Virus record (IMG/VR): IMGVR_UViG_3300035182_002586
Coordinates: 434,001-498,000 of that record
Reading direction: 5' to 3' (one strand)
Length of the DNA stretch: 64,000 nt
Made by a program: the position numbers and the translations under genes. This document shows, piece by piece, positions 11,418 through 63,315 of the stretch. Position 1 is the stretch's first letter, and each line of letters starts with the position of its first letter. Under the pieces are notes generated by a model. The model saw nothing but the letters and a program-made list of their open reading frames with translations, ran no database searches and was not told the origin of the DNA.

Positions 11418-11424
11418 GTACACC
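11418..11424 (-). promoter_or_regulatory. class B element GGTGTAC
   Basis: 11 nt to ATG 11406. Confidence 0.6.
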
Positions 11425-14780: not shown

Positions 14781-14787
14781 GGTGTAC
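14781..14787 (+). promoter_or_regulatory. class B element GGTGTAC
   Basis: 8 nt to ATG 14796. Confidence 0.6.
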
Positions 14788-18855: not shown

Positions 18856-18862
18856 GGTGTAC
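18856..18862 (+). promoter_or_regulatory. class B element GGTGTAC
   Basis: 11 nt to ATG 18874. Confidence 0.55.
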
Positions 18863-23033: not shown

Positions 23034-23040
23034 GTACACC
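23034..23040 (-). promoter_or_regulatory. class B element GGTGTAC
   Basis: 13 nt to ATG 23020; abuts class A copy at 23041. Confidence 0.55.
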
Positions 23041-24428: not shown

Positions 24429-26483
24429 CTACGAGGCGCCGTTGGTCGGCGTCGCCGGGGTCTTCTTGCCGACCTCGGCGCGGATCTGGTTCCGCAGTGC
24501 CTCGGTCTCCGGGCTCCGCTTGGGGGCCGCCGAGAGCACCGTGTCAGCCGCGAACTTGTCCGACATCACCATCGTCAGCAGAGTCTCCAGGATGCCCGAG
24601 CCCTGGCCGTTCTGACTCCCGACGACGATGCGAGGCACCACATCGACCTTCGACTCACGGATGGCGTTCGAGAAGCCCTCCATGACCTGCTGAGTGAGCT
24701 GGAACTTCGGACCACCGTAGGCAGCCACCTGCTCCTCGATCGCCACGGCCTGCGCGATACCGACGCGTGCAGCCCGGTCCGCCTCGGCTTCGGCGAGGTA
24801 GCGAACCTTGTCCGCTTCGGCGCGCGCCATCGCGCGAACCTTGTCGGCCTCCGCTTCTGCCATCGCACGGATCTGCGAGGCCGTCTGAATCGACCGCTGG
24901 TACTGCGCCTTGCCCTCGTTCTCCTGCGTCCGGATGGAGATCTCGGACTCGGTGAGCTGCTGCTGAGCCCTCGAAACCGCCTCGGCCTCGCGAAGCGCGC
25001 GTTCCTTCTCCGCAGCCTTCTGCTGGCGGTCGTAGGTGCCGATCTGCTCTTCGGCGATCTGACGCGAGCGGAGCTGCGTCAGGATGGTGCCGATCTGCTT
25101 GTCGTTGTCGTCCGGCGACGGCGTGCCGATGAGGACCTCTTCCAGCTCCAGGTTGTACTGCGCGAACTTGGCCTTCATCCCCACGGCCGACTCGCTCTGG
25201 ATCTCGCTGCGCTCCTGAATGAGCTGGATCAGCGTCCGGGTCTGCGCCACGTTCTTGAAGTACGCGCTGACCATCGGGTCGAGCGTCTGGTTCACGAGGC
25301 GCTGGATGTCACCGAAGCGCTGGACAACGAGCGGCGCCTTGCGGTAGTCGATGTGCACGACAACCGAGAGCGGCAGCCAGGGCTCGAACGCGTCCTTGGT
25401 GATGAGCCCGACCTCGCAGAGGTTCTCGTCGAACTTGTGAGCAGACACTTCCGTCTCTTCCCACTTGAGGATGAAGTTCGTGGTCGGGACCGTGACGATC
25501 TTCCCGGCGTACGTGTTGAACGCGTACTTGCCCGGCATCAGAGCCTCGTCCCACACGCCGCGCTGACCCTTGCGAACCAGCTCCCCGTGCGAGTAGTCCG
25601 ACCCCGAGAGGTCCGCGCCCGCCTCGCCCGTGTAGGAGACTACGACGCCGACCGTGCCGACCTCGATGACCGTCTTGGGGATCAGCTCGACCGTCGCGAA
25701 GAGCCGGTTGATGTAGTAGGTCCCGTCGACGAGCACCTGCATCTGGCGCCCACGACGGCCGCCCGCAGCCAGGAAGAGCAGAGGGTCCTGGAAGTTGTTG
25801 TGGTAGGAGGGCTTCTCCGGATCCTCTCCGACGAGCGGGGCGATCACGTCCCCGTGGGAGAGACCCGGGCCGTCGTGCACGGTCACGACCCCGATCTTGT
25901 CGTCCGTGCCCCGGATCACGATCGGCTTGAAGCCATCACGCTCCCGGATGATGGTCGACATCTTCTCCAGCTCGTGCTTGTCATTCGACAGGCTCAGCCC
26001 ATACACCTCGTCCTCGGTGAAGACCGCGAAGAGGGCCGGGTTGATGGCGTACGTCCCCTCACGGAGGATCGTCATCTGCGGGCCCCGCTGACCTCCCCCT
26101 GCGAGGAACGCCCGAGCATCCCCGTAATTGGCGCACCCCACCACGCATCCTGCGAGGGTCTGCGTCGCTTCGAGCTGCTTGCCGTCGCGCGCGAAGACGT
26201 AGCCGATCTTGCCCTGCGGCACGGTGACCAGCGGCGCCTTGTGGACGCGGTACTGAATCGGCGTGAGCCAGTGGATGCCGCCACGGAGCATGTCGGGCTG
26301 GTAGCCCGCCTCGCCCCCGAGGGCCATGAAGCCGCTCTTGACGGAGCCCTTGCGTGACCACCGTTTCTCAACGACGGCCACGCGATTGTTCGGGATGACT
26401 CGTACCCCTGAGAGGAGCACAAAGAAGACGAGGAGGCCCAAGGCCACCTCGATGAGGAATGCCGGTTCGGGCAGGTGGTGCAT
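24429..26483 (-). CDS. SPFH/band 7 flotillin-family membrane protein
   Basis: N-terminal TM, LITKDAFE..LP.SVVVHID SPFH core, AEA/EAE coiled coil. Confidence 0.85.
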   Translation of the reverse strand: MHHLPEPAFLIEVALGLLVFFVLLSGVRVIPNNRVAVVEKRWSRKGSVKSGFMALGGEAGYQPDMLRGGIHWLTPIQYRVHKAPLVTVPQGKIGYVFARDGKQLEATQTLAGCVVGCANYGDARAFLAGGGQRGPQMTILREGTYAINPALFAVFTEDEVYGLSLSNDKHELEKMSTIIRERDGFKPIVIRGTDDKIGVVTVHDGPGLSHGDVIAPLVGEDPEKPSYHNNFQDPLLFLAAGGRRGRQMQVLVDGTYYINRLFATVELIPKTVIEVGTVGVVVSYTGEAGADLSGSDYSHGELVRKGQRGVWDEALMPGKYAFNTYAGKIVTVPTTNFILKWEETEVSAHKFDENLCEVGLITKDAFEPWLPLSVVVHIDYRKAPLVVQRFGDIQRLVNQTLDPMVSAYFKNVAQTRTLIQLIQERSEIQSESAVGMKAKFAQYNLELEEVLIGTPSPDDNDKQIGTILTQLRSRQIAEEQIGTYDRQQKAAEKERALREAEAVSRAQQQLTESEISIRTQENEGKAQYQRSIQTASQIRAMAEAEADKVRAMARAEADKVRYLAEAEADRAARVGIAQAVAIEEQVAAYGGPKFQLTQQVMEGFSNAIRESKVDVVPRIVVGSQNGQGSGILETLLTMVMSDKFAADTVLSAAPKRSPETEALRNQIRAEVGKKTPATPTNGAS

Positions 26484-26493
26484 GGGCGCGGTG

Positions 26494-26500
26494 GTACACC
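26494..26500 (-). promoter_or_regulatory. class B element GGTGTAC
   Basis: 10 nt to ATG 26483. Confidence 0.6.
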
Positions 26501-26521: not shown

Positions 26522-27631
26522 CTACTTTCCCTTGCCGAGGAACTCCTTGATCGAGGGGAGGATCGCATCGCGGTCTGCGATCTGGCTCAGGGTCACCCGA
26601 TCGTCGTCGGGGAATGCCGTTCGGAGGTCCTTGTAGAACTGCCCCGACCCGTACGGAGAATCGACCTGTCCGTACGAGAACACGTTCACGACGGGCAGGA
26701 GGCGATCGCGCAGGACCTTGATGCAATCCTCCGTGTCCTCAGTCGACCAGTTGTCCCCGTCGGAGAAGTGGAAAGGGTAGATGTTCCACGAAGATGAGGG
26801 GTAGTCCTTGTCGATGATCTTCATGCACAGGTCCAGAGCCGACGAGATCCTCGTCCCTCCAGACTCGCGCGTGTGGAAGAACGTGTGCCGGTCGACCTCG
26901 CGCGCCTCTGCGTCGTGGGTGATGAACCGGGTCTCGATGCCCTTGTACTGACGTCGGAGCCAGAGGTCGATCCAGAAGGACTCCAGGCGGACGATCTCTT
27001 TCTGGTCGTCGCCCATCGAGCCCGACACGTCCATCATGTAGATGACGACGGCCTGCGCCTGCGGCTTGAGGGTGATGTCCGGCGCGCGGTAGCGCCAGTC
27101 GTCTCGCACGGGCATGAGCACGGGCTGGTCGGGGTTGTAGTCCCCCGACGAGATGGCGCGCTTGAGCGTCTCCTTGTAGCTGCGCTTCATGTGGCGCAGC
27201 GACCCGGGCCCCACTCTGGAGATCCCCGTGTACTTGTTCGAGTCCTGGATGATGTTCTCTTTGCCCTTGTTCTCGATCTTCGGGAGTTGGAGTTCGTCTC
27301 CGAGCATGTCGGCGAGTTCATCCATGGAGATGTCCGCCTCGATCCCGTGCTTGTCCGTGTCCTTGCCGGCCTTCTTGCCCTTGCCCTTCTGGTCCGGGTC
27401 GCCGCCCACGGGATCGCCTACGTCCCCATCCCCCTGTCCTGCGCCCCCCGCCTGCTTGTCACCGTAGACGAAGCGCGGCATGTCGATCTGAGGGATCGGC
27501 ACGGACACGACATCCTTGCCGACGCGGCCGAGAAGCTCCCCCGAAGAGATGTACTTCGAGAGGTTCCCGCGCACCTTCTTGCGGATGATGTCCTTGAACC
27601 TCGAATGGTCTGCGCCGATGCGATTCGACAT
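26522..27631 (-). CDS. yeaH: YeaH/YhbH family (DUF444) protein
   Basis: DHSRFKDII, MMDVSGSM, SGGT.ISSA, NIYPFHFSDGDNW. Confidence 0.9.
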   Translation of the reverse strand: MSNRIGADHSRFKDIIRKKVRGNLSKYISSGELLGRVGKDVVSVPIPQIDMPRFVYGDKQAGGAGQGDGDVGDPVGGDPDQKGKGKKAGKDTDKHGIEADISMDELADMLGDELQLPKIENKGKENIIQDSNKYTGISRVGPGSLRHMKRSYKETLKRAISSGDYNPDQPVLMPVRDDWRYRAPDITLKPQAQAVVIYMMDVSGSMGDDQKEIVRLESFWIDLWLRRQYKGIETRFITHDAEAREVDRHTFFHTRESGGTRISSALDLCMKIIDKDYPSSSWNIYPFHFSDGDNWSTEDTEDCIKVLRDRLLPVVNVFSYGQVDSPYGSGQFYKDLRTAFPDDDRVTLSQIADRDAILPSIKEFLGKGK

Positions 27632-27642
27632 GGAGCCTCCCG

Positions 27643-27660
27643 GTACACCGGACGGTGTAG
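27643..27660. promoter_or_regulatory. divergent class B pair TACACC-N4-GGTGTA
   Basis: 11 nt to ATG 27631 (-), 9 nt to ATG 27670 (+). Confidence 0.7.
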
Positions 27661-27669
27661 CTTAGCGCA

Positions 27670-28086
27670 ATGGCCGACGAAGAAGCCAAGGTCGACGTCG
27701 TGATCGCCACGCGCCTGTGGAAGCTCTATAACCTCGTGTGGACGGGCAATCTCTACGAGAAGGCCCGAGCGAACACGCTCCAGAAGTACCCCGCAGTCCA
27801 CGAGTTCGTCCCCGAAGACAAGCGCACGAACCTCCCGGACGCCTGGGACCTCGGACGGGTCCGGCACTTCTACGAGCTGCTGCGCGCGGGCAAGTCCATC
27901 GACCCCATCGACGTGGACAACGAGTGCCACAACGGGTTCATCTACCCCGTCCCCATCGTCCTCGATGGCCACCACCGGCTCGTTGCGGCCGCCCTCGCAA
28001 GGGCCCGCATCCCCGTGCACTACGGTGGCCGGATTGACCTTCTCGACTACCTCACGGGCAAGCGACGGACGGCCCCGACGGCCTAG
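27670..28086 (+). CDS. ParB/Srx-like N-terminal domain protein
   Basis: IDPIDVD...IVLDGHHRLVAA. Confidence 0.7.
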   Translation: MADEEAKVDVVIATRLWKLYNLVWTGNLYEKARANTLQKYPAVHEFVPEDKRTNLPDAWDLGRVRHFYELLRAGKSIDPIDVDNECHNGFIYPVPIVLDGHHRLVAAALARARIPVHYGGRIDLLDYLTGKRRTAPTA

Positions 28087-29106: not shown

Positions 29107-29113
29107 GTACACC
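29107..29113 (-). promoter_or_regulatory. class B element GGTGTAC
   Basis: 7 nt to ATG 29099. Confidence 0.55.
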
Positions 29114-29145: not shown

Positions 29146-29553
29146 ATGGCCCTCCGCACGGTCGGAGATCCCCGGTCCGAAGTCGTGGTCCTTGGACCCC
29201 AAGGACGCATCGTGGGCCATATTTTCGTCGACCTCAGCCTCTACGGCATCGACGACCCCGTTCTCGATGACCAGGACCTACGACCCTTCATCATCAACTG
29301 CCTCGACGGGATCATCCTCGTCGCCCACCGGCAGGTCGACCGCAAGTCGCGGTTCCTCGAACTCGGGCCCATGGATCTAGAGCACGAGCCGGTTCTGCGC
29401 GAAGCCTTCGAGATGCCCGCCGCGCACATGTACACGAGCGACTACATCAGGCACACGCAAGCGGTGAACAACACCGAAGTCTTGCGGATCAAGGGGTTGG
29501 CCGGAGCCCATTTCGGACGACGGGCCCGTGCATCCAGTGGTCTCCCGAACTGA
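29146..29553 (+). CDS. hypothetical protein
   Basis: 135 aa ORF; 3' overlap with ligase gene. Confidence 0.65.
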   Translation: MALRTVGDPRSEVVVLGPQGRIVGHIFVDLSLYGIDDPVLDDQDLRPFIINCLDGIILVAHRQVDRKSRFLELGPMDLEHEPVLREAFEMPAAHMYTSDYIRHTQAVNNTEVLRIKGLAGAHFGRRARASSGLPN

Positions 29554-30151
29554 CGTGATCCTTTCGGACCCACTTTCCAACCGCGCGTGAGAACTCGCCC
29601 TCTCCGAAGCCGCAGGCCCACCGAACGACGACGCCCTCCCTCTCCCCACCGCAGGCTGACGGCTGCACCGCGAAGCGCTCAACGATGGCCTGGAGGTCCT
29701 GCGCTCGGGGTGCTGGAGCGGGCTGTGCGAGAACCGGGACTGTCGGTAGCCCGAGGGACGCCGCACACTCCTCGACCTCGGCCCACGAGTGCCAACGGAG
29801 TGTCTGCGCGTTGCGTACTCCGAAGACGGTCAGGTAGGCGGGCAGCGCCGTGTAGGCGATCGAGTGCTTCGCCCAGAGCCACTCCCCGAACACCTGGAGG
29901 TTGTCGGGGATGCTGTCGCGCAACGACGCCCACAGAGCCTTGAAGGCGTCGAAGCTCGGGTGCGACGGCGGCTTCCCGTGGCTGCGCGCAAAACACCCCT
30001 CCCGTTCGAGGCTCACGTTGCTGCCGTCGAGCTTCTCGGTGAAGACGAGGGGCACCTTGAGGAGCGAACCGACGCTCTTCATGCGCTTGTCGTCGCTCTC
30101 GCCTCCAGGGGAGAACGGGAAGTGGGAGGTGCGGGGGTACTTGAGGCTCAT
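29489..30151 (-). CDS. ATP-dependent RNA ligase, Rnl2-like family
   Basis: KYPRT.H, motif I TEKLDGSN, FGE, REGVVVR, KWVR. Confidence 0.85.
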   Translation of the reverse strand: MSLKYPRTSHFPFSPGGESDDKRMKSVGSLLKVPLVFTEKLDGSNVSLEREGCFARSHGKPPSHPSFDAFKALWASLRDSIPDNLQVFGEWLWAKHSIAYTALPAYLTVFGVRNAQTLRWHSWAEVEECAASLGLPTVPVLAQPAPAPRAQDLQAIVERFAVQPSACGGEREGVVVRWACGFGEGEFSRAVGKWVRKDHVSSGDHWMHGPVVRNGLRPTP

Positions 30152-55180: not shown

Positions 55181-55323
55181 CCACCAGGGTCCAGGTCACC
55201 GTCTTCGGCGCGGCGCTCCTCGGAGCCCTGTGGTTCGGCTTCGCTGGACACCCGGTCCCCACTGCCGTCTGCATCGCCATCGCGTACTACACGAAGGAAG
55301 CACCCGTCGAGGATGAGGAGTGA
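55177..55323 (+). CDS. small membrane protein (48 aa)
   Basis: ATGA/TGATG overlaps; hydrophobic; not in ORF track. Confidence 0.55.
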   Translation: MTTRVQVTVFGAALLGALWFGFAGHPVPTAVCIAIAYYTKEAPVEDEE

Positions 55324-55712
55324 TGCGCCACTCATTCTCCTACCGCTTCACCCACCTCGTGACCGGGCCCTTCCCGTTCGAGTACTGGACCTGGACAGGC
55401 AAGTCCGGCGCTCACGCGTGGAGCCGACCCAACGCCCTGTCCGCCACGATGAAGATCGCCTTCCCGAGGCACACCATCACCGGAAGCCCCACCGACGTTC
55501 GCGCCCGCTACGATGACGCGATCGCACACCTCCCCCGAGGCGTACGGACAACGATCACCGGGATCAGGGACAACGATAACGGCTCGATCGACCTCGGCAC
55601 CATCGCCTGCGTGCAGGACGTTGATCTCACCGAGGACGAGTGCCCCTTCTGGTTCGAGCCACCGGAGCCTCAACCCCTGTGGGAGAAGCTCCTCGTGGAC
55701 GACCCGTTCTAG
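55323..55712 (+). CDS. hypothetical protein with LWEKL tail
   Basis: ends EPPEPQPLWEKLLVDDPF. Confidence 0.75.
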   Translation: MRHSFSYRFTHLVTGPFPFEYWTWTGKSGAHAWSRPNALSATMKIAFPRHTITGSPTDVRARYDDAIAHLPRGVRTTITGIRDNDNGSIDLGTIACVQDVDLTEDECPFWFEPPEPQPLWEKLLVDDPF

Positions 55713-56228: not shown

Positions 56229-56235
56229 GTACACC
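56229..56235 (-). promoter_or_regulatory. class B element GGTGTAC
   Basis: 10 nt to ATG 56218; divergent from class A at 56240. Confidence 0.6.
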
Positions 56236-63308: not shown

Positions 63309-63315
63309 GTACACC
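63309..63315 (-). promoter_or_regulatory. class B element GGTGTAC
   Basis: 10 nt to ATG 63298. Confidence 0.6.

What the first reader, a model, noticed from the sequence alone, without database searches (positions are those of the whole stretch)
26522..27631. Phage-borne YeaH/YhbH (DUF444) without its usual PrkA/YeaG and SpoVR/YcgB neighbours
Seen: intact 369 aa gene with a vWA-like MIDAS (DVSGSM) and its own class B element, flanked by flotillin and a ParB-like gene. Established: yeaG-yeaH-ycgB (prkA-yhbH-spoVR) is a conserved stress/sporulation module. Inference: the phage may retune or titrate the host AAA+/vWA module that controls dormancy or development; partners may lie elsewhere on the genome.
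Basis: partly seen in the sequence, partly recalled or inferred. Interest (0 to 1): 0.6.

Follow-up and report, generated by a model that had tools for sequence, protein, structure and literature searches.

The report
Lone YeaH gene in huge phage
A half-megabase phage carries an intact, selectively maintained copy of the bacterial stress and dormancy protein YeaH/YhbH without its partners PrkA and SpoVR, which probably lets it tap the host's own PrkA system; lone phage copies of this family are already catalogued, so this is a solid but not surprising case.

Summary
Window 26522-27631 (-) encodes an intact 369-aa DUF444/YeaH protein: Pfam 2e-85, and NCBIfam NF003711 at 587 bits over its full length. 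It has a complete vWA MIDAS site. The 529 kb record is a real huge phage with a portal, a large terminase and tail genes. It has no PrkA or SpoVR domain, but 81.6 kb of the 620 kb parent contig was not seen.

The gene is not a passenger. Six copies at 63-82% identity, all on phage-like contigs, form one clade (support 97) with dN/dS 0.18-0.28. Of 129 residues that are near-invariant in bacteria, 106 are kept in all six. A phage-specific GGTGTAC motif sits 11 nt before the start codon.

The closest bacterial relatives are Polyangia-type Myxococcota (62-67%), and the three Polyangia-type loci examined do not keep the three genes together.

The kind is known. PHROGs holds two phage DUF444 families, Bacillus phages carry lone "YhbH" genes, and RsoM2USA, Thermus MN1 and LR756511 carry the full trio.

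The most likely role is a working YeaH that acts through host PrkA and SpoVR to change the host's starvation or dormancy programme. The direction of that change is unknown. The one complex prediction gave no verdict.

The parts
26522..27631 (-). DUF444 / YeaH-YhbH family gene, 369 aa. N-terminal conserved region (1-55), Gly/Asp/Lys-rich linker (56-97), helical region, and C-terminal vWA domain (about 190-369) with an intact MIDAS site.
27643..27659 (-). Phage gene-start motif GGTGTAC (27649-27643), forming the right half of the palindrome TACACCG-TC-CGGTGTA (27659-27644). It ends 11 nt before the DUF444 ATG, with GGGAGG between. The whole divergent intergenic region is 38 nt (27632-27669).
   Evidence: the motif is conserved before the DUF444 orthologues in L023, L132 and L027
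26494..26500 (-). Second copy of the GGTGTAC motif, in the 38-nt DUF444-SPFH spacer, 10 nt before the SPFH start codon.
24429..26483 (-). Downstream neighbour: 684-aa SPFH/Band 7 (flotillin-like) protein with an N-terminal hydrophobic segment. Syntenic only in relative L132 (81% identity).
27670..28086 (+). Divergent upstream neighbour: 138-aa weakly ParB/sulfiredoxin-like protein with a DGHHR motif. An orthologue (53%) sits in the same position in L132.
29489..30151 (-). RNA ligase gene (context only); part of the block that is syntenic with L132.

Best explanation
This is a genuine, functional phage-encoded YeaH/YhbH (DUF444) protein.

Origin and maintenance. An ancestor of a group of high-GC huge phages (contigs of 0.18-0.66 Mb) captured it once from the 369-aa 'deltaproteobacterial' YeaH subfamily (NF003711; Myxococcota and Bdellovibrionota). 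It has since been inherited under purifying selection. It is driven by a phage-specific gene-start motif rather than by host-type stress regulation.

Architecture. The protein keeps the whole YeaH layout: a conserved N-terminal segment, a glycine-rich linker, and a vWA domain with a complete metal-binding MIDAS site.

Inferred mechanism. The phage encodes neither PrkA (an AAA+ Lon-like protease) nor SpoVR, so the protein most likely acts during infection by joining the host's own PrkA-YeaH-SpoVR module. As an extra or replacement vWA subunit it would change the activity or targets of host PrkA, and so the host's starvation, quiescence or developmental response. Many other phages carry the complete trio, which suggests phages benefit from the module being active. 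I therefore favour 'supplies or redirects activity' over 'inert decoy'.

Shown here: identity, intactness, phage location, absence of partners in 529 kb, selection, clade conservation and the phage-type motif. Inferred: binding to host PrkA/SpoVR, the effect on dormancy, and the Myxococcota host.
For: Identity: NF003711, 587 bits, full length; phrog_19072, 273 bits.

vWA and MIDAS.

Phage genome: portal 7e-28 and large terminase 3.9e-20; tail-like proteins and helicases. The DNA beyond the IMG/VR trim point is still ORFan-rich and holds an Endonuclease_7 gene.

No partners.

Maintained: the six phage-like copies form one clade with SH-aLRT 97. They lie on contigs that share other genes with this phage. 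dN/dS is 0.18-0.28. Of 129 columns at least 95% conserved in bacteria, 106 are kept in all six copies, and no conserved patch is lost.

Phage-type control: GGTGTAC ends 7-13 nt before the start codon at 26 of 34 motif-bearing genes, including this one, and is conserved before the orthologues in L023, L132 and L027.

Arrangement confirmed independently: identical contigs in run X2 and 97-98% identical contigs in run X3 span both junctions.

Pathway logic: YeaG, YeaH and YcgB are mutually cofit with r>0.7 in six bacteria (10.1101/072470). YeaG and YeaH act together as a 'metabolic brake' whose dosage matters (PMC10954441). PrkA is an ATP-dependent protease needed for sporulation (PMC9512850).

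Phages with the full trio: RsoM2USA (PMC8504454), Thermus MN1, LR756511, and 40 of 46 well-flanked IMG/VR loci.

The two Myxococcota genomes searched encode PrkA on a different contig from their DUF444 gene, so the module can work with unlinked genes.
Against: No direct evidence of binding: the PrkA-YeaH complex prediction gave no verdict, and no YeaH complex or structure is solved.

No RNA data hold the gene, so expression is inferred.

The host is inferred only from highest identity (62-67% to Polyangia-type proteins) and 64% GC. The tree puts the phage clade beside the bacterial groups, not inside Polyangia.

81.6 kb of the parent contig was not seen and could hold PrkA or SpoVR.

The direction of the effect (boost, retarget or poison) is undetermined.

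The gene sits next to an SPFH gene here and in L132, which could mean a phage-internal partnership instead.
Confidence: 0.55

Rival explanations
1. The phage YeaH has been repurposed and works with phage-encoded partners rather than host PrkA/SpoVR. Candidates are the membrane SPFH protein encoded 38 nt downstream, the weak-VWA_2/ThiF gene cluster, or the phage's AAA_5 ATPase.
For: The SPFH gene directly follows DUF444 here and in L132, with orthologues at 81%. In L027 the DUF444 gene abuts the 635-aa weak-VWA_2 gene, and in L134 it lies about 5 kb from it and about 2 kb from ThiF. One AAA_5 ATPase exists at 55.3 kb of the record.
Against: No neighbour is conserved across the six phage copies: there is no SPFH near the gene in L023, L027, L133 or L134. 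The AAA_5 gene is about 405 kb away, beside the portal. The protein retains 106 of 129 near-invariant bacterial positions and shows no lineage-wide remodelling of any surface, which argues for an unchanged partner set. Each of DUF444 and SPFH has its own start motif.
Confidence: 0.2
2. The phage YeaH is a dominant-negative decoy. It occupies host PrkA or SpoVR non-productively, releases the YeaG/YeaH 'metabolic brake', and keeps starved host cells active (or stops myxospore development) so that the phage can replicate.
For: Loss of yeaG or yeaH shortens the lag on recovery from starvation in E. coli, and excess YeaG/YeaH delays recovery (PMC10954441), so a phage would gain from switching the brake off. 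Two substitutions recur in the phage lineage at positions otherwise near-invariant in bacteria: G18 to K/R and I109 to M, each in 5 of 6 copies. Phage genes that disrupt sporulation are documented for other families (PMC9429907, listed).
Against: All MIDAS residues and most conserved positions are retained, which a simple blocker would not need. Most viral DUF444 loci bring PrkA and SpoVR along (40 of 46), which suggests phages want the pathway on, not off. No binding data exist (one search gave no verdict).
Confidence: 0.2
3. The gene belongs to the host, or is a recent functionless passenger. Either the record is a bacterial region or prophage boundary, or the gene is a neutral moron picked up by chance.
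For: IMG/VR labels the record 'provirus' and trimmed 90.6 kb of the contig as host. The protein scores as a full-length bacterial equivalog. A transposase-like gene lies 40 kb away.
Against: Phage hallmark genes and dense ORFans lie on both sides, and the DNA past the trim point looks equally phage-like. The nearest bacterial homologue is only about 67% identical, while five phage-context copies are 63-82% identical and monophyletic. dN/dS is 0.18-0.28. The phage-specific start motif is conserved in orthologues.
Confidence: 0.03

Closest known systems
Bacterial YeaH/YhbH (DUF444, PF04285), 369-aa subfamily NF003711 of Myxococcota and Bdellovibrionota
   Same: Same length and architecture. It scores 587 bits against the equivalog model, is 56-67% identical, and has all invariant residues including MIDAS.
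   Different: It is encoded on a phage, with a phage-type start motif. It has no adjacent PrkA or SpoVR, whereas nearly all 80 bacterial loci with enough flank show PrkA-DUF444-SpoVR. Polyangiaceae are a partial exception: they keep DUF444-SpoVR only, or none.
Lone 'YhbH-like sporulation protein' of Bacillus Bastille-like phages (e.g. Thurquoise Thu_23; phrog_10856)
   Same: A phage-borne DUF444/vWA protein without PrkA or SpoVR nearby. PHROGs classes it as moron/AMG/host takeover.
   Different: Only about 33% identical over the vWA core (residues 187-334). Those proteins are shorter (317 aa), come from Firmicutes phages of about 160 kb, and were acquired independently.
Phage-borne complete PrkA-YeaH-SpoVR modules (Ralstonia jumbo phage RsoM2USA ORF28-30; Thermus phage MN1 MN1_200-220; 595 kb uncultured phage LR756511)
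   Same: Large phages that carry a DUF444 gene of bacterial origin.
   Different: Those phages bring their own PrkA and SpoVR. This phage, five relatives and the low-GC phages L144-L146 carry YeaH alone. Identity to them is about 30-36%.
AAA+ / vWA-MIDAS partner pairs (MoxR-type systems such as RavA-ViaA and CbbQ-CbbO; from general knowledge)
   Same: A vWA protein with a MIDAS site that is genetically coupled in bacteria to an AAA+ ATPase (PrkA). This suggests an adaptor or regulator role for the vWA subunit.
   Different: PrkA is a Lon-like AAA+ protease, not a MoxR ATPase (PMC9512850). No physical YeaH-PrkA complex has been shown, and here the AAA+ partner would have to come from the host.

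Membership tests
DUF444 / YeaH-YhbH (PF04285; NCBIfam NF003711) | HMM score above the curated cut-off over the full length | tested here: met
   PF04285: 287.8 bits against 27. NF003711: 587.4 bits against 388, covering 2-369 of 369.
DUF444 / YeaH-YhbH (PF04285; NCBIfam NF003711) | C-terminal vWA fold with a complete MIDAS site (DxSxS ... T ... D) | tested here: met
   D201, S203, S205, T260, D291 and D293 are invariant in 36 sequences. The model has pLDDT 80-94 over residues 190-369. Foldseek gives probability 1.00 to vWA/I-domains.
DUF444 / YeaH-YhbH (PF04285; NCBIfam NF003711) | Genomic coupling to PrkA/YeaG and SpoVR/YcgB (operon or regulon) | tested here: not met
   No PF08298, PF06798 or PF04293 match in the 529 kb record. 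tblastn best E=0.48. 81.6 kb of the parent contig was not seen.
DUF444 / YeaH-YhbH (PF04285; NCBIfam NF003711) | Acts in one pathway with PrkA and SpoVR (cofitness, shared phenotype) | not testable with these tools
   Known for bacteria only (10.1101/072470; PMC10954441). The complex prediction gave no verdict.
Firmicute sporulation protein YhbH (TIGR02877) | Score above the equivalog cut-off | tested here: not met
   271.4 bits against a cut-off of 467.95. This is a relative, not a member, so 'sporulation protein' should not be transferred as a name.
Phage DUF444 family phrog_19072 | Full-length HMM match | tested here: met
   E=6.9e-81, 273 bits, residues 7-365 against model positions 17-372 of 378.
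MoxR-type AAA+/vWA two-gene system | Adjacent AAA+ ATPase gene | tested here: not met
   The neighbours are SPFH and a ParB-like gene. The only AAA_5 hit in the record is about 405 kb away.
Known anti-phage defence systems (PADLOC-DB) | HMM match to a defence-system component | tested here: not met
   No hit for DUF444, SPFH, the ParB-like protein or the 708-aa weak-VWA_2 protein.

The most novel reading that the evidence does not exclude
YeaH may be the control subunit of the PrkA AAA+ protease system, and huge phages may have repeatedly captured it alone as a minimal 'handle' on the host module. At least three independent lineages would have done so: this high-GC clade, the low-GC 130-394 kb phages L144-L146, and Bacillus Bastille-like phages. 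In this phage, whose likely host is a developmental myxobacterium of the Polyangia, the phage YeaH would retarget or lock host PrkA to block or delay starvation-induced quiescence or spore development during a long infection cycle.
Probability: 0.25. Interest if true: 0.65.

Novelty: new member of a known kind. Interest (0 to 1): 0.35.

Why it matters
The PrkA-YeaH-SpoVR trio is one of the most widespread bacterial stress and dormancy modules whose biochemistry is still unsolved, and YeaH's role is unknown.

Phages appear to use the module in two ways. Some carry the whole trio: 40 of 46 well-flanked viral loci, plus three named phages. Others carry YeaH alone, in at least three lineages. That points to YeaH as a subunit that can act through the host's copies of the other two. 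It also gives a natural 'orthogonal YeaH' reagent for dissecting the module. Examples are complementation tests, pull-downs against host PrkA and SpoVR, and MIDAS mutants.

For phage biology, it adds a candidate dormancy-control gene outside the Firmicutes, where phage-borne sporulation genes have mostly been discussed. The carrier is a phage of about 0.6 Mb, probably infecting Myxococcota.

On its own, though, the gene is an expected kind of host-derived accessory gene, and it is already represented in phage protein family databases.

Tried and rejected
- Complex prediction: Polyangiaceae PrkA residues 1-628, Mg, and the full phage YeaH scored 0.00, 'no answer'. This is not evidence either way. 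PrkA had to be truncated by 52 residues to fit the 1000-residue cap, and a monomer was used although AAA+ proteins work as hexamers.
- The search for related loci in viral contigs with the single protein found nothing. The alignment-based scan then found 422 stretches.
- A sequence search of the PDB found no solved DUF444 structure.
- PADLOC gave no defence-system match.
- No RNA run holds the stretch, so expression could not be checked.
- An attempt to search the whole 620 kb parent contig failed because the record is not held. I did not walk further into it, because a session may hold only 40 kb of a metagenome record.
- My first crude gene call dropped the target, because the longest form of the SPFH ORF (765 aa, TTG start) overlaps it. 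One family scan also failed on a frame error. Reading the sequence corrected the SPFH start to 26483, and this agrees with JGI's call.
- Distant phage outgroups (RsoM2USA, MN1, LR756511) gave saturated branches in the first tree, so they were removed for the second. Rooting, and hence the donor lineage, remains unresolved.
- I considered and rejected a reading of GGTGTAC as an extended Shine-Dalgarno sequence. By my own comparison with the usual 16S rRNA 3' end, it does not match the anti-SD complement.
- The large profile search (search of protein representatives) was not run, since the family was already clear.

Full report
**1. The observation**

Window 26522-27631 (minus strand) is an open frame of 369 codons, ATG to TAG. 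JGI's gene call on the parent contig gives the same protein. It matches Pfam DUF444 at E=2.1e-85. It matches the NCBIfam equivalog model NF003711 at 587 bits (cut-off 388) over positions 2-369 of 369. The firmicute model TIGR02877 (spore_yhbH) is matched only below its cut-off (271 against 468 bits), so the label 'sporulation protein' should not be transferred.

Together with T260 (ESGGT) and D291/D293 (FSDGDNW) it forms a complete MIDAS site, and all these residues are invariant in a 36-sequence alignment. An AlphaFold model is confident for residues about 190-369 (pLDDT 80-94) and weak for the N-terminal 190 residues. Foldseek matches the confident part to many solved vWA/integrin I-domains at probability 1.00. 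No DUF444 structure is solved.

**2. Surroundings**

The downstream gene starts at the ATG at 26483, 38 nt after the DUF444 stop. It encodes a 684-aa SPFH/Band 7 protein with an N-terminal hydrophobic segment. The divergent upstream gene (27670-28086, +) is 138 aa. It has only a weak ParB-like PHROG hit (E=5e-5) and no Pfam hit at 0.01, but it has a DGHHR motif typical of the ParB/sulfiredoxin fold (the motif assignment is from general knowledge). An RNA ligase gene lies at 29489-30151.

**3. The 'class B element'**

CGGTGTACC occurs 9 times in the window against 0.45 expected, and the core GGTGTAC 28 times against 4.1 expected. Across the whole record, 34 of 613 called genes have GGTGTAC within 60 nt upstream. 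In 26 of these it ends 7-13 nt before the start codon. About nine also have an upstream TACACC half-site that makes a palindrome.

The DUF444 gene has such a palindrome (TACACCG-TC-CGGTGTA, 27659-27644). It ends 11 nt before its ATG, inside a divergent intergenic region of only 38 nt. The SPFH gene has its own copy 10 nt before its ATG. The motif is conserved before the DUF444 orthologues in L023, L132 and L027. So the gene is wired into a phage-specific control system. Whether the motif is a promoter, an operator or an RNA hairpin is not known.

**4. Phage or bacterium?**

The window is positions 434,001-498,000 of a 528,957-bp IMG/VR record labelled 'provirus'. The record encodes:
- a portal (phrog_16240, 7e-28) and a large terminase (phrog_2, 3.9e-20) at 57-63 kb;
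- weak baseplate-hub and tail-fibre matches at 267-275 kb;
- helicases, exonuclease V and an NAD ligase.

Most genes are small and have no family match.

The parent contig is 620,031 bp. By coordinates, the record is roughly 90,622-619,578 of it. The 9 kb seen beyond the trim point is equally ORFan-rich and holds a T4-type Endonuclease_7 gene. The 'provirus' trimming therefore looks like an artefact, and the phage is probably about 0.6 Mb.

Contigs from another run (X2, identical sequence) and another study (X3, 97-98% identical) span both gene junctions around DUF444. The arrangement is not an assembly chimera.

**5. Partners**

Neither the PrkA AAA domain (PF08298), the PrkA C-domain (PF06798) nor SpoVR (PF04293) is found in the record. 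tblastn with a Bacteriovoracia PrkA and SpoVR gives nothing better than E=0.48. One DUF444 copy is present.

Caveat: 81.6 kb of the parent contig could not be read.

**6. Relatives**

The word-based protein search gives 81, 77, 75 and 72% identity for P0002-P0005. It then reaches a plateau of 62-67% in proteins named for Polyangiales, Polyangiaceae and Myxococcales, some on contigs of several Mb. Bdellovibrionota proteins are 56-61% identical.

P0002-P0005 and P0033 (63%) all lie on contigs dense with small unannotated genes, plus Ku, GIY-YIG, LAGLIDADG, SpoU and ThiF genes. None has PrkA or SpoVR within reach. L023 and L027 share other proteins with this genome at 31-69% identity, and L134 carries the same ThiF and weak-VWA_2 gene pair. 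P0033 occurs on contigs up to 659 kb.

With saturated outgroups removed, the six sequences form one clade (SH-aLRT 97). That clade lies beside, not inside, the bacterial Polyangia-type and Bdellovibrionota groups. This indicates one old capture, with the donor unresolved.

Pairwise dN/dS among the phage copies is 0.18-0.28. Of the 129 columns that are at least 95% conserved in 38 bacterial sequences, 106 are unchanged in all six phage copies. Only G18 to K/R and I109 to M recur, each in 5 of 6 copies.

The neighbourhood is not conserved. Only L132 shares the block of RNA ligase, ParB-like gene, DUF444 and SPFH. In L027 and L134 the gene sits by a weak-VWA_2/ThiF cluster, which in this genome is at 150.7-155.9 kb.

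**7. What the bacterial context looks like**

In 80 named bacterial loci, nearly every one with enough flank has PrkA-DUF444-SpoVR in that order. Polyangiaceae are the exception. L051 and L053 keep only DUF444-SpoVR, L048 has neither, and in L025/L026 SpoVR lies 7.4 kb away. The two Myxococcota genomes searched do encode a bona fide PrkA, on a different contig from DUF444. So in the three Polyangia-type loci examined, the module already works with unlinked genes.

**8. What is already known in phages**

tblastn against 50,697 phage records finds DUF444 relatives in 31 of them.
- Ralstonia jumbo phage RsoM2USA carries SpoVR, DUF444 and PrkA as ORF28-30 (PMC8504454).
- Thermus phage MN1 carries DUF444, spoVR and a 'serine protein kinase' side by side.
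- The 595 kb uncultured phage LR756511 carries PrkA, DUF444 and SpoVR.
- Bacillus phage Thurquoise and its relatives carry a lone 'YhbH-like' gene.
- PHROGs holds two DUF444 families. The target matches phrog_19072 over its full length and phrog_10856 ('sporulation protein', host-takeover category) over the vWA core.

In IMG/VR, at least 422 stretches encode a relative. Among the best 80 loci, 46 have at least 4 kb on both sides. Of those, 40 have the full trio, 3 have PrkA plus DUF444, and 3 are lone. Those three lone loci (L144-L146) are low-GC phages of 130-394 kb, one estimated 92% complete. They have no PrkA or SpoVR in the whole record and share almost no other genes with this phage. Lone YeaH has thus arisen in at least three phage lineages.

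**9. Mechanism**

From the literature:
- YeaG and YeaH act together as a dosage-sensitive 'metabolic brake' in nitrogen-starved E. coli (PMC10954441).
- B. subtilis PrkA is an ATP-dependent, Lon-like protease whose ATPase activity is required for sporulation (PMC9512850).

By analogy with other AAA+/vWA pairs (general knowledge), YeaH is probably the adaptor or regulatory subunit.

A phage protein that keeps every conserved YeaH feature but comes without PrkA and SpoVR most likely acts through the host's copies. That would alter the host's starvation, quiescence or developmental response. Because most phage DUF444 loci bring the whole module along, I lean towards the phage wanting the pathway active or redirected rather than blocked. 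A dominant-negative role cannot be excluded.

The one complex prediction returned no verdict and counts neither way. It used truncated monomeric Polyangiaceae PrkA, Mg and the phage YeaH. No RNA data were available.

**10. Verdict**

This is a new member of a known kind: a host-derived, phage-maintained lone YeaH.

The more interesting point is the pattern across phages, with the full trio in many and YeaH alone in several independent lineages. That pattern nominates YeaH as the lever of the PrkA system.

Noticed in passing
whole record G000; in the window e.g. 11418-11424(-), 14781-14787(+), 18856-18862(+), 23034-23040(-), 26494-26500(-), 27643-27649(-), 29107-29113(-), 56229-56235(-), 63309-63315(-): A GGTGTAC gene-start motif. 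34 of 613 called genes have it within 60 nt upstream, and in 26 it ends 7-13 nt before the start codon. About nine also have an upstream TACACC half-site forming a palindrome. The sites cluster in the record's arms (0-20 kb and 400-529 kb). Its nature (phage promoter, operator or 5' hairpin) is unknown.
   Followed up: partly
L136 (parent contig Ga0373636_0000001, 81,588-103,384); record start = contig position about 90,622: The IMG/VR 'provirus' trim removed 90.6 kb from one end of a 620,031-bp contig. The 9 kb seen past the boundary is as ORFan-rich as the phage and holds Endonuclease_7, an RF-1 domain protein and a histone-deacetylase-like gene. The trimming is probably an artefact and the phage about 0.6 Mb.
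   Followed up: partly
G000 150,747-155,904 (outside the window); L027 2663-9289; L134 13058-18329: A conserved cluster of a 635-708 aa protein with a weak VWA_2 hit plus a ThiF (E1-like) protein. It is far from DUF444 in this genome, directly next to it in L027 and within about 5 kb in L134. It may be a second vWA-based system; no PADLOC hit.
   Followed up: partly
L144, L145, L146 (IMG/VR records of 394, 130 and 204 kb): Low-GC (35-41%) large phages carry a lone DUF444 of the same 369-aa subfamily (50-51% identity). They have no PrkA or SpoVR in the record and almost no other genes shared with this phage. This is an independent case of lone YeaH.
   Followed up: yes
IMG/VR loci L144-L223: At least 422 viral-contig stretches encode a DUF444 relative. 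Of the 46 loci among the best 80 with at least 4 kb on both sides, 40 carry the complete PrkA-DUF444-SpoVR trio. The whole module is a common phage cargo. How many of these contigs are true phages was not checked.
   Followed up: partly
G000 501,846-504,236 (-) (L022): A 796-aa protein with a C-terminal transposase-like domain (phrog_506 and phrog_12300, about 1e-13), preceded by the GGTGTAC motif 10 nt before its ATG.
   Followed up: no
G000 55,296-55,526 (-) (L143): The only MoxR-type AAA_5 ATPase hit in the record (E=2.8e-6, open frame 447 aa), lying just beside the portal gene.
   Followed up: no
L139 and L140 (Polyangiaceae G001 and Myxococcales G002): Both Myxococcota genomes carry a second, divergent PrkA-like paralogue (26-28% identity to PrkA, about 750-780 aa open frame) besides the canonical PrkA.
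   Followed up: no
window 26756-27127: Contig depth in the laid runs peaks sharply over the MIDAS-encoding part of the gene, because conserved DUF444 segments from other organisms in the same metagenomes also align there. This is not a copy-number signal.
   Followed up: yes
window 1-64000: ARAGORN finds no tRNA or tmRNA gene in this 64 kb stretch of a very large phage genome.
   Followed up: no
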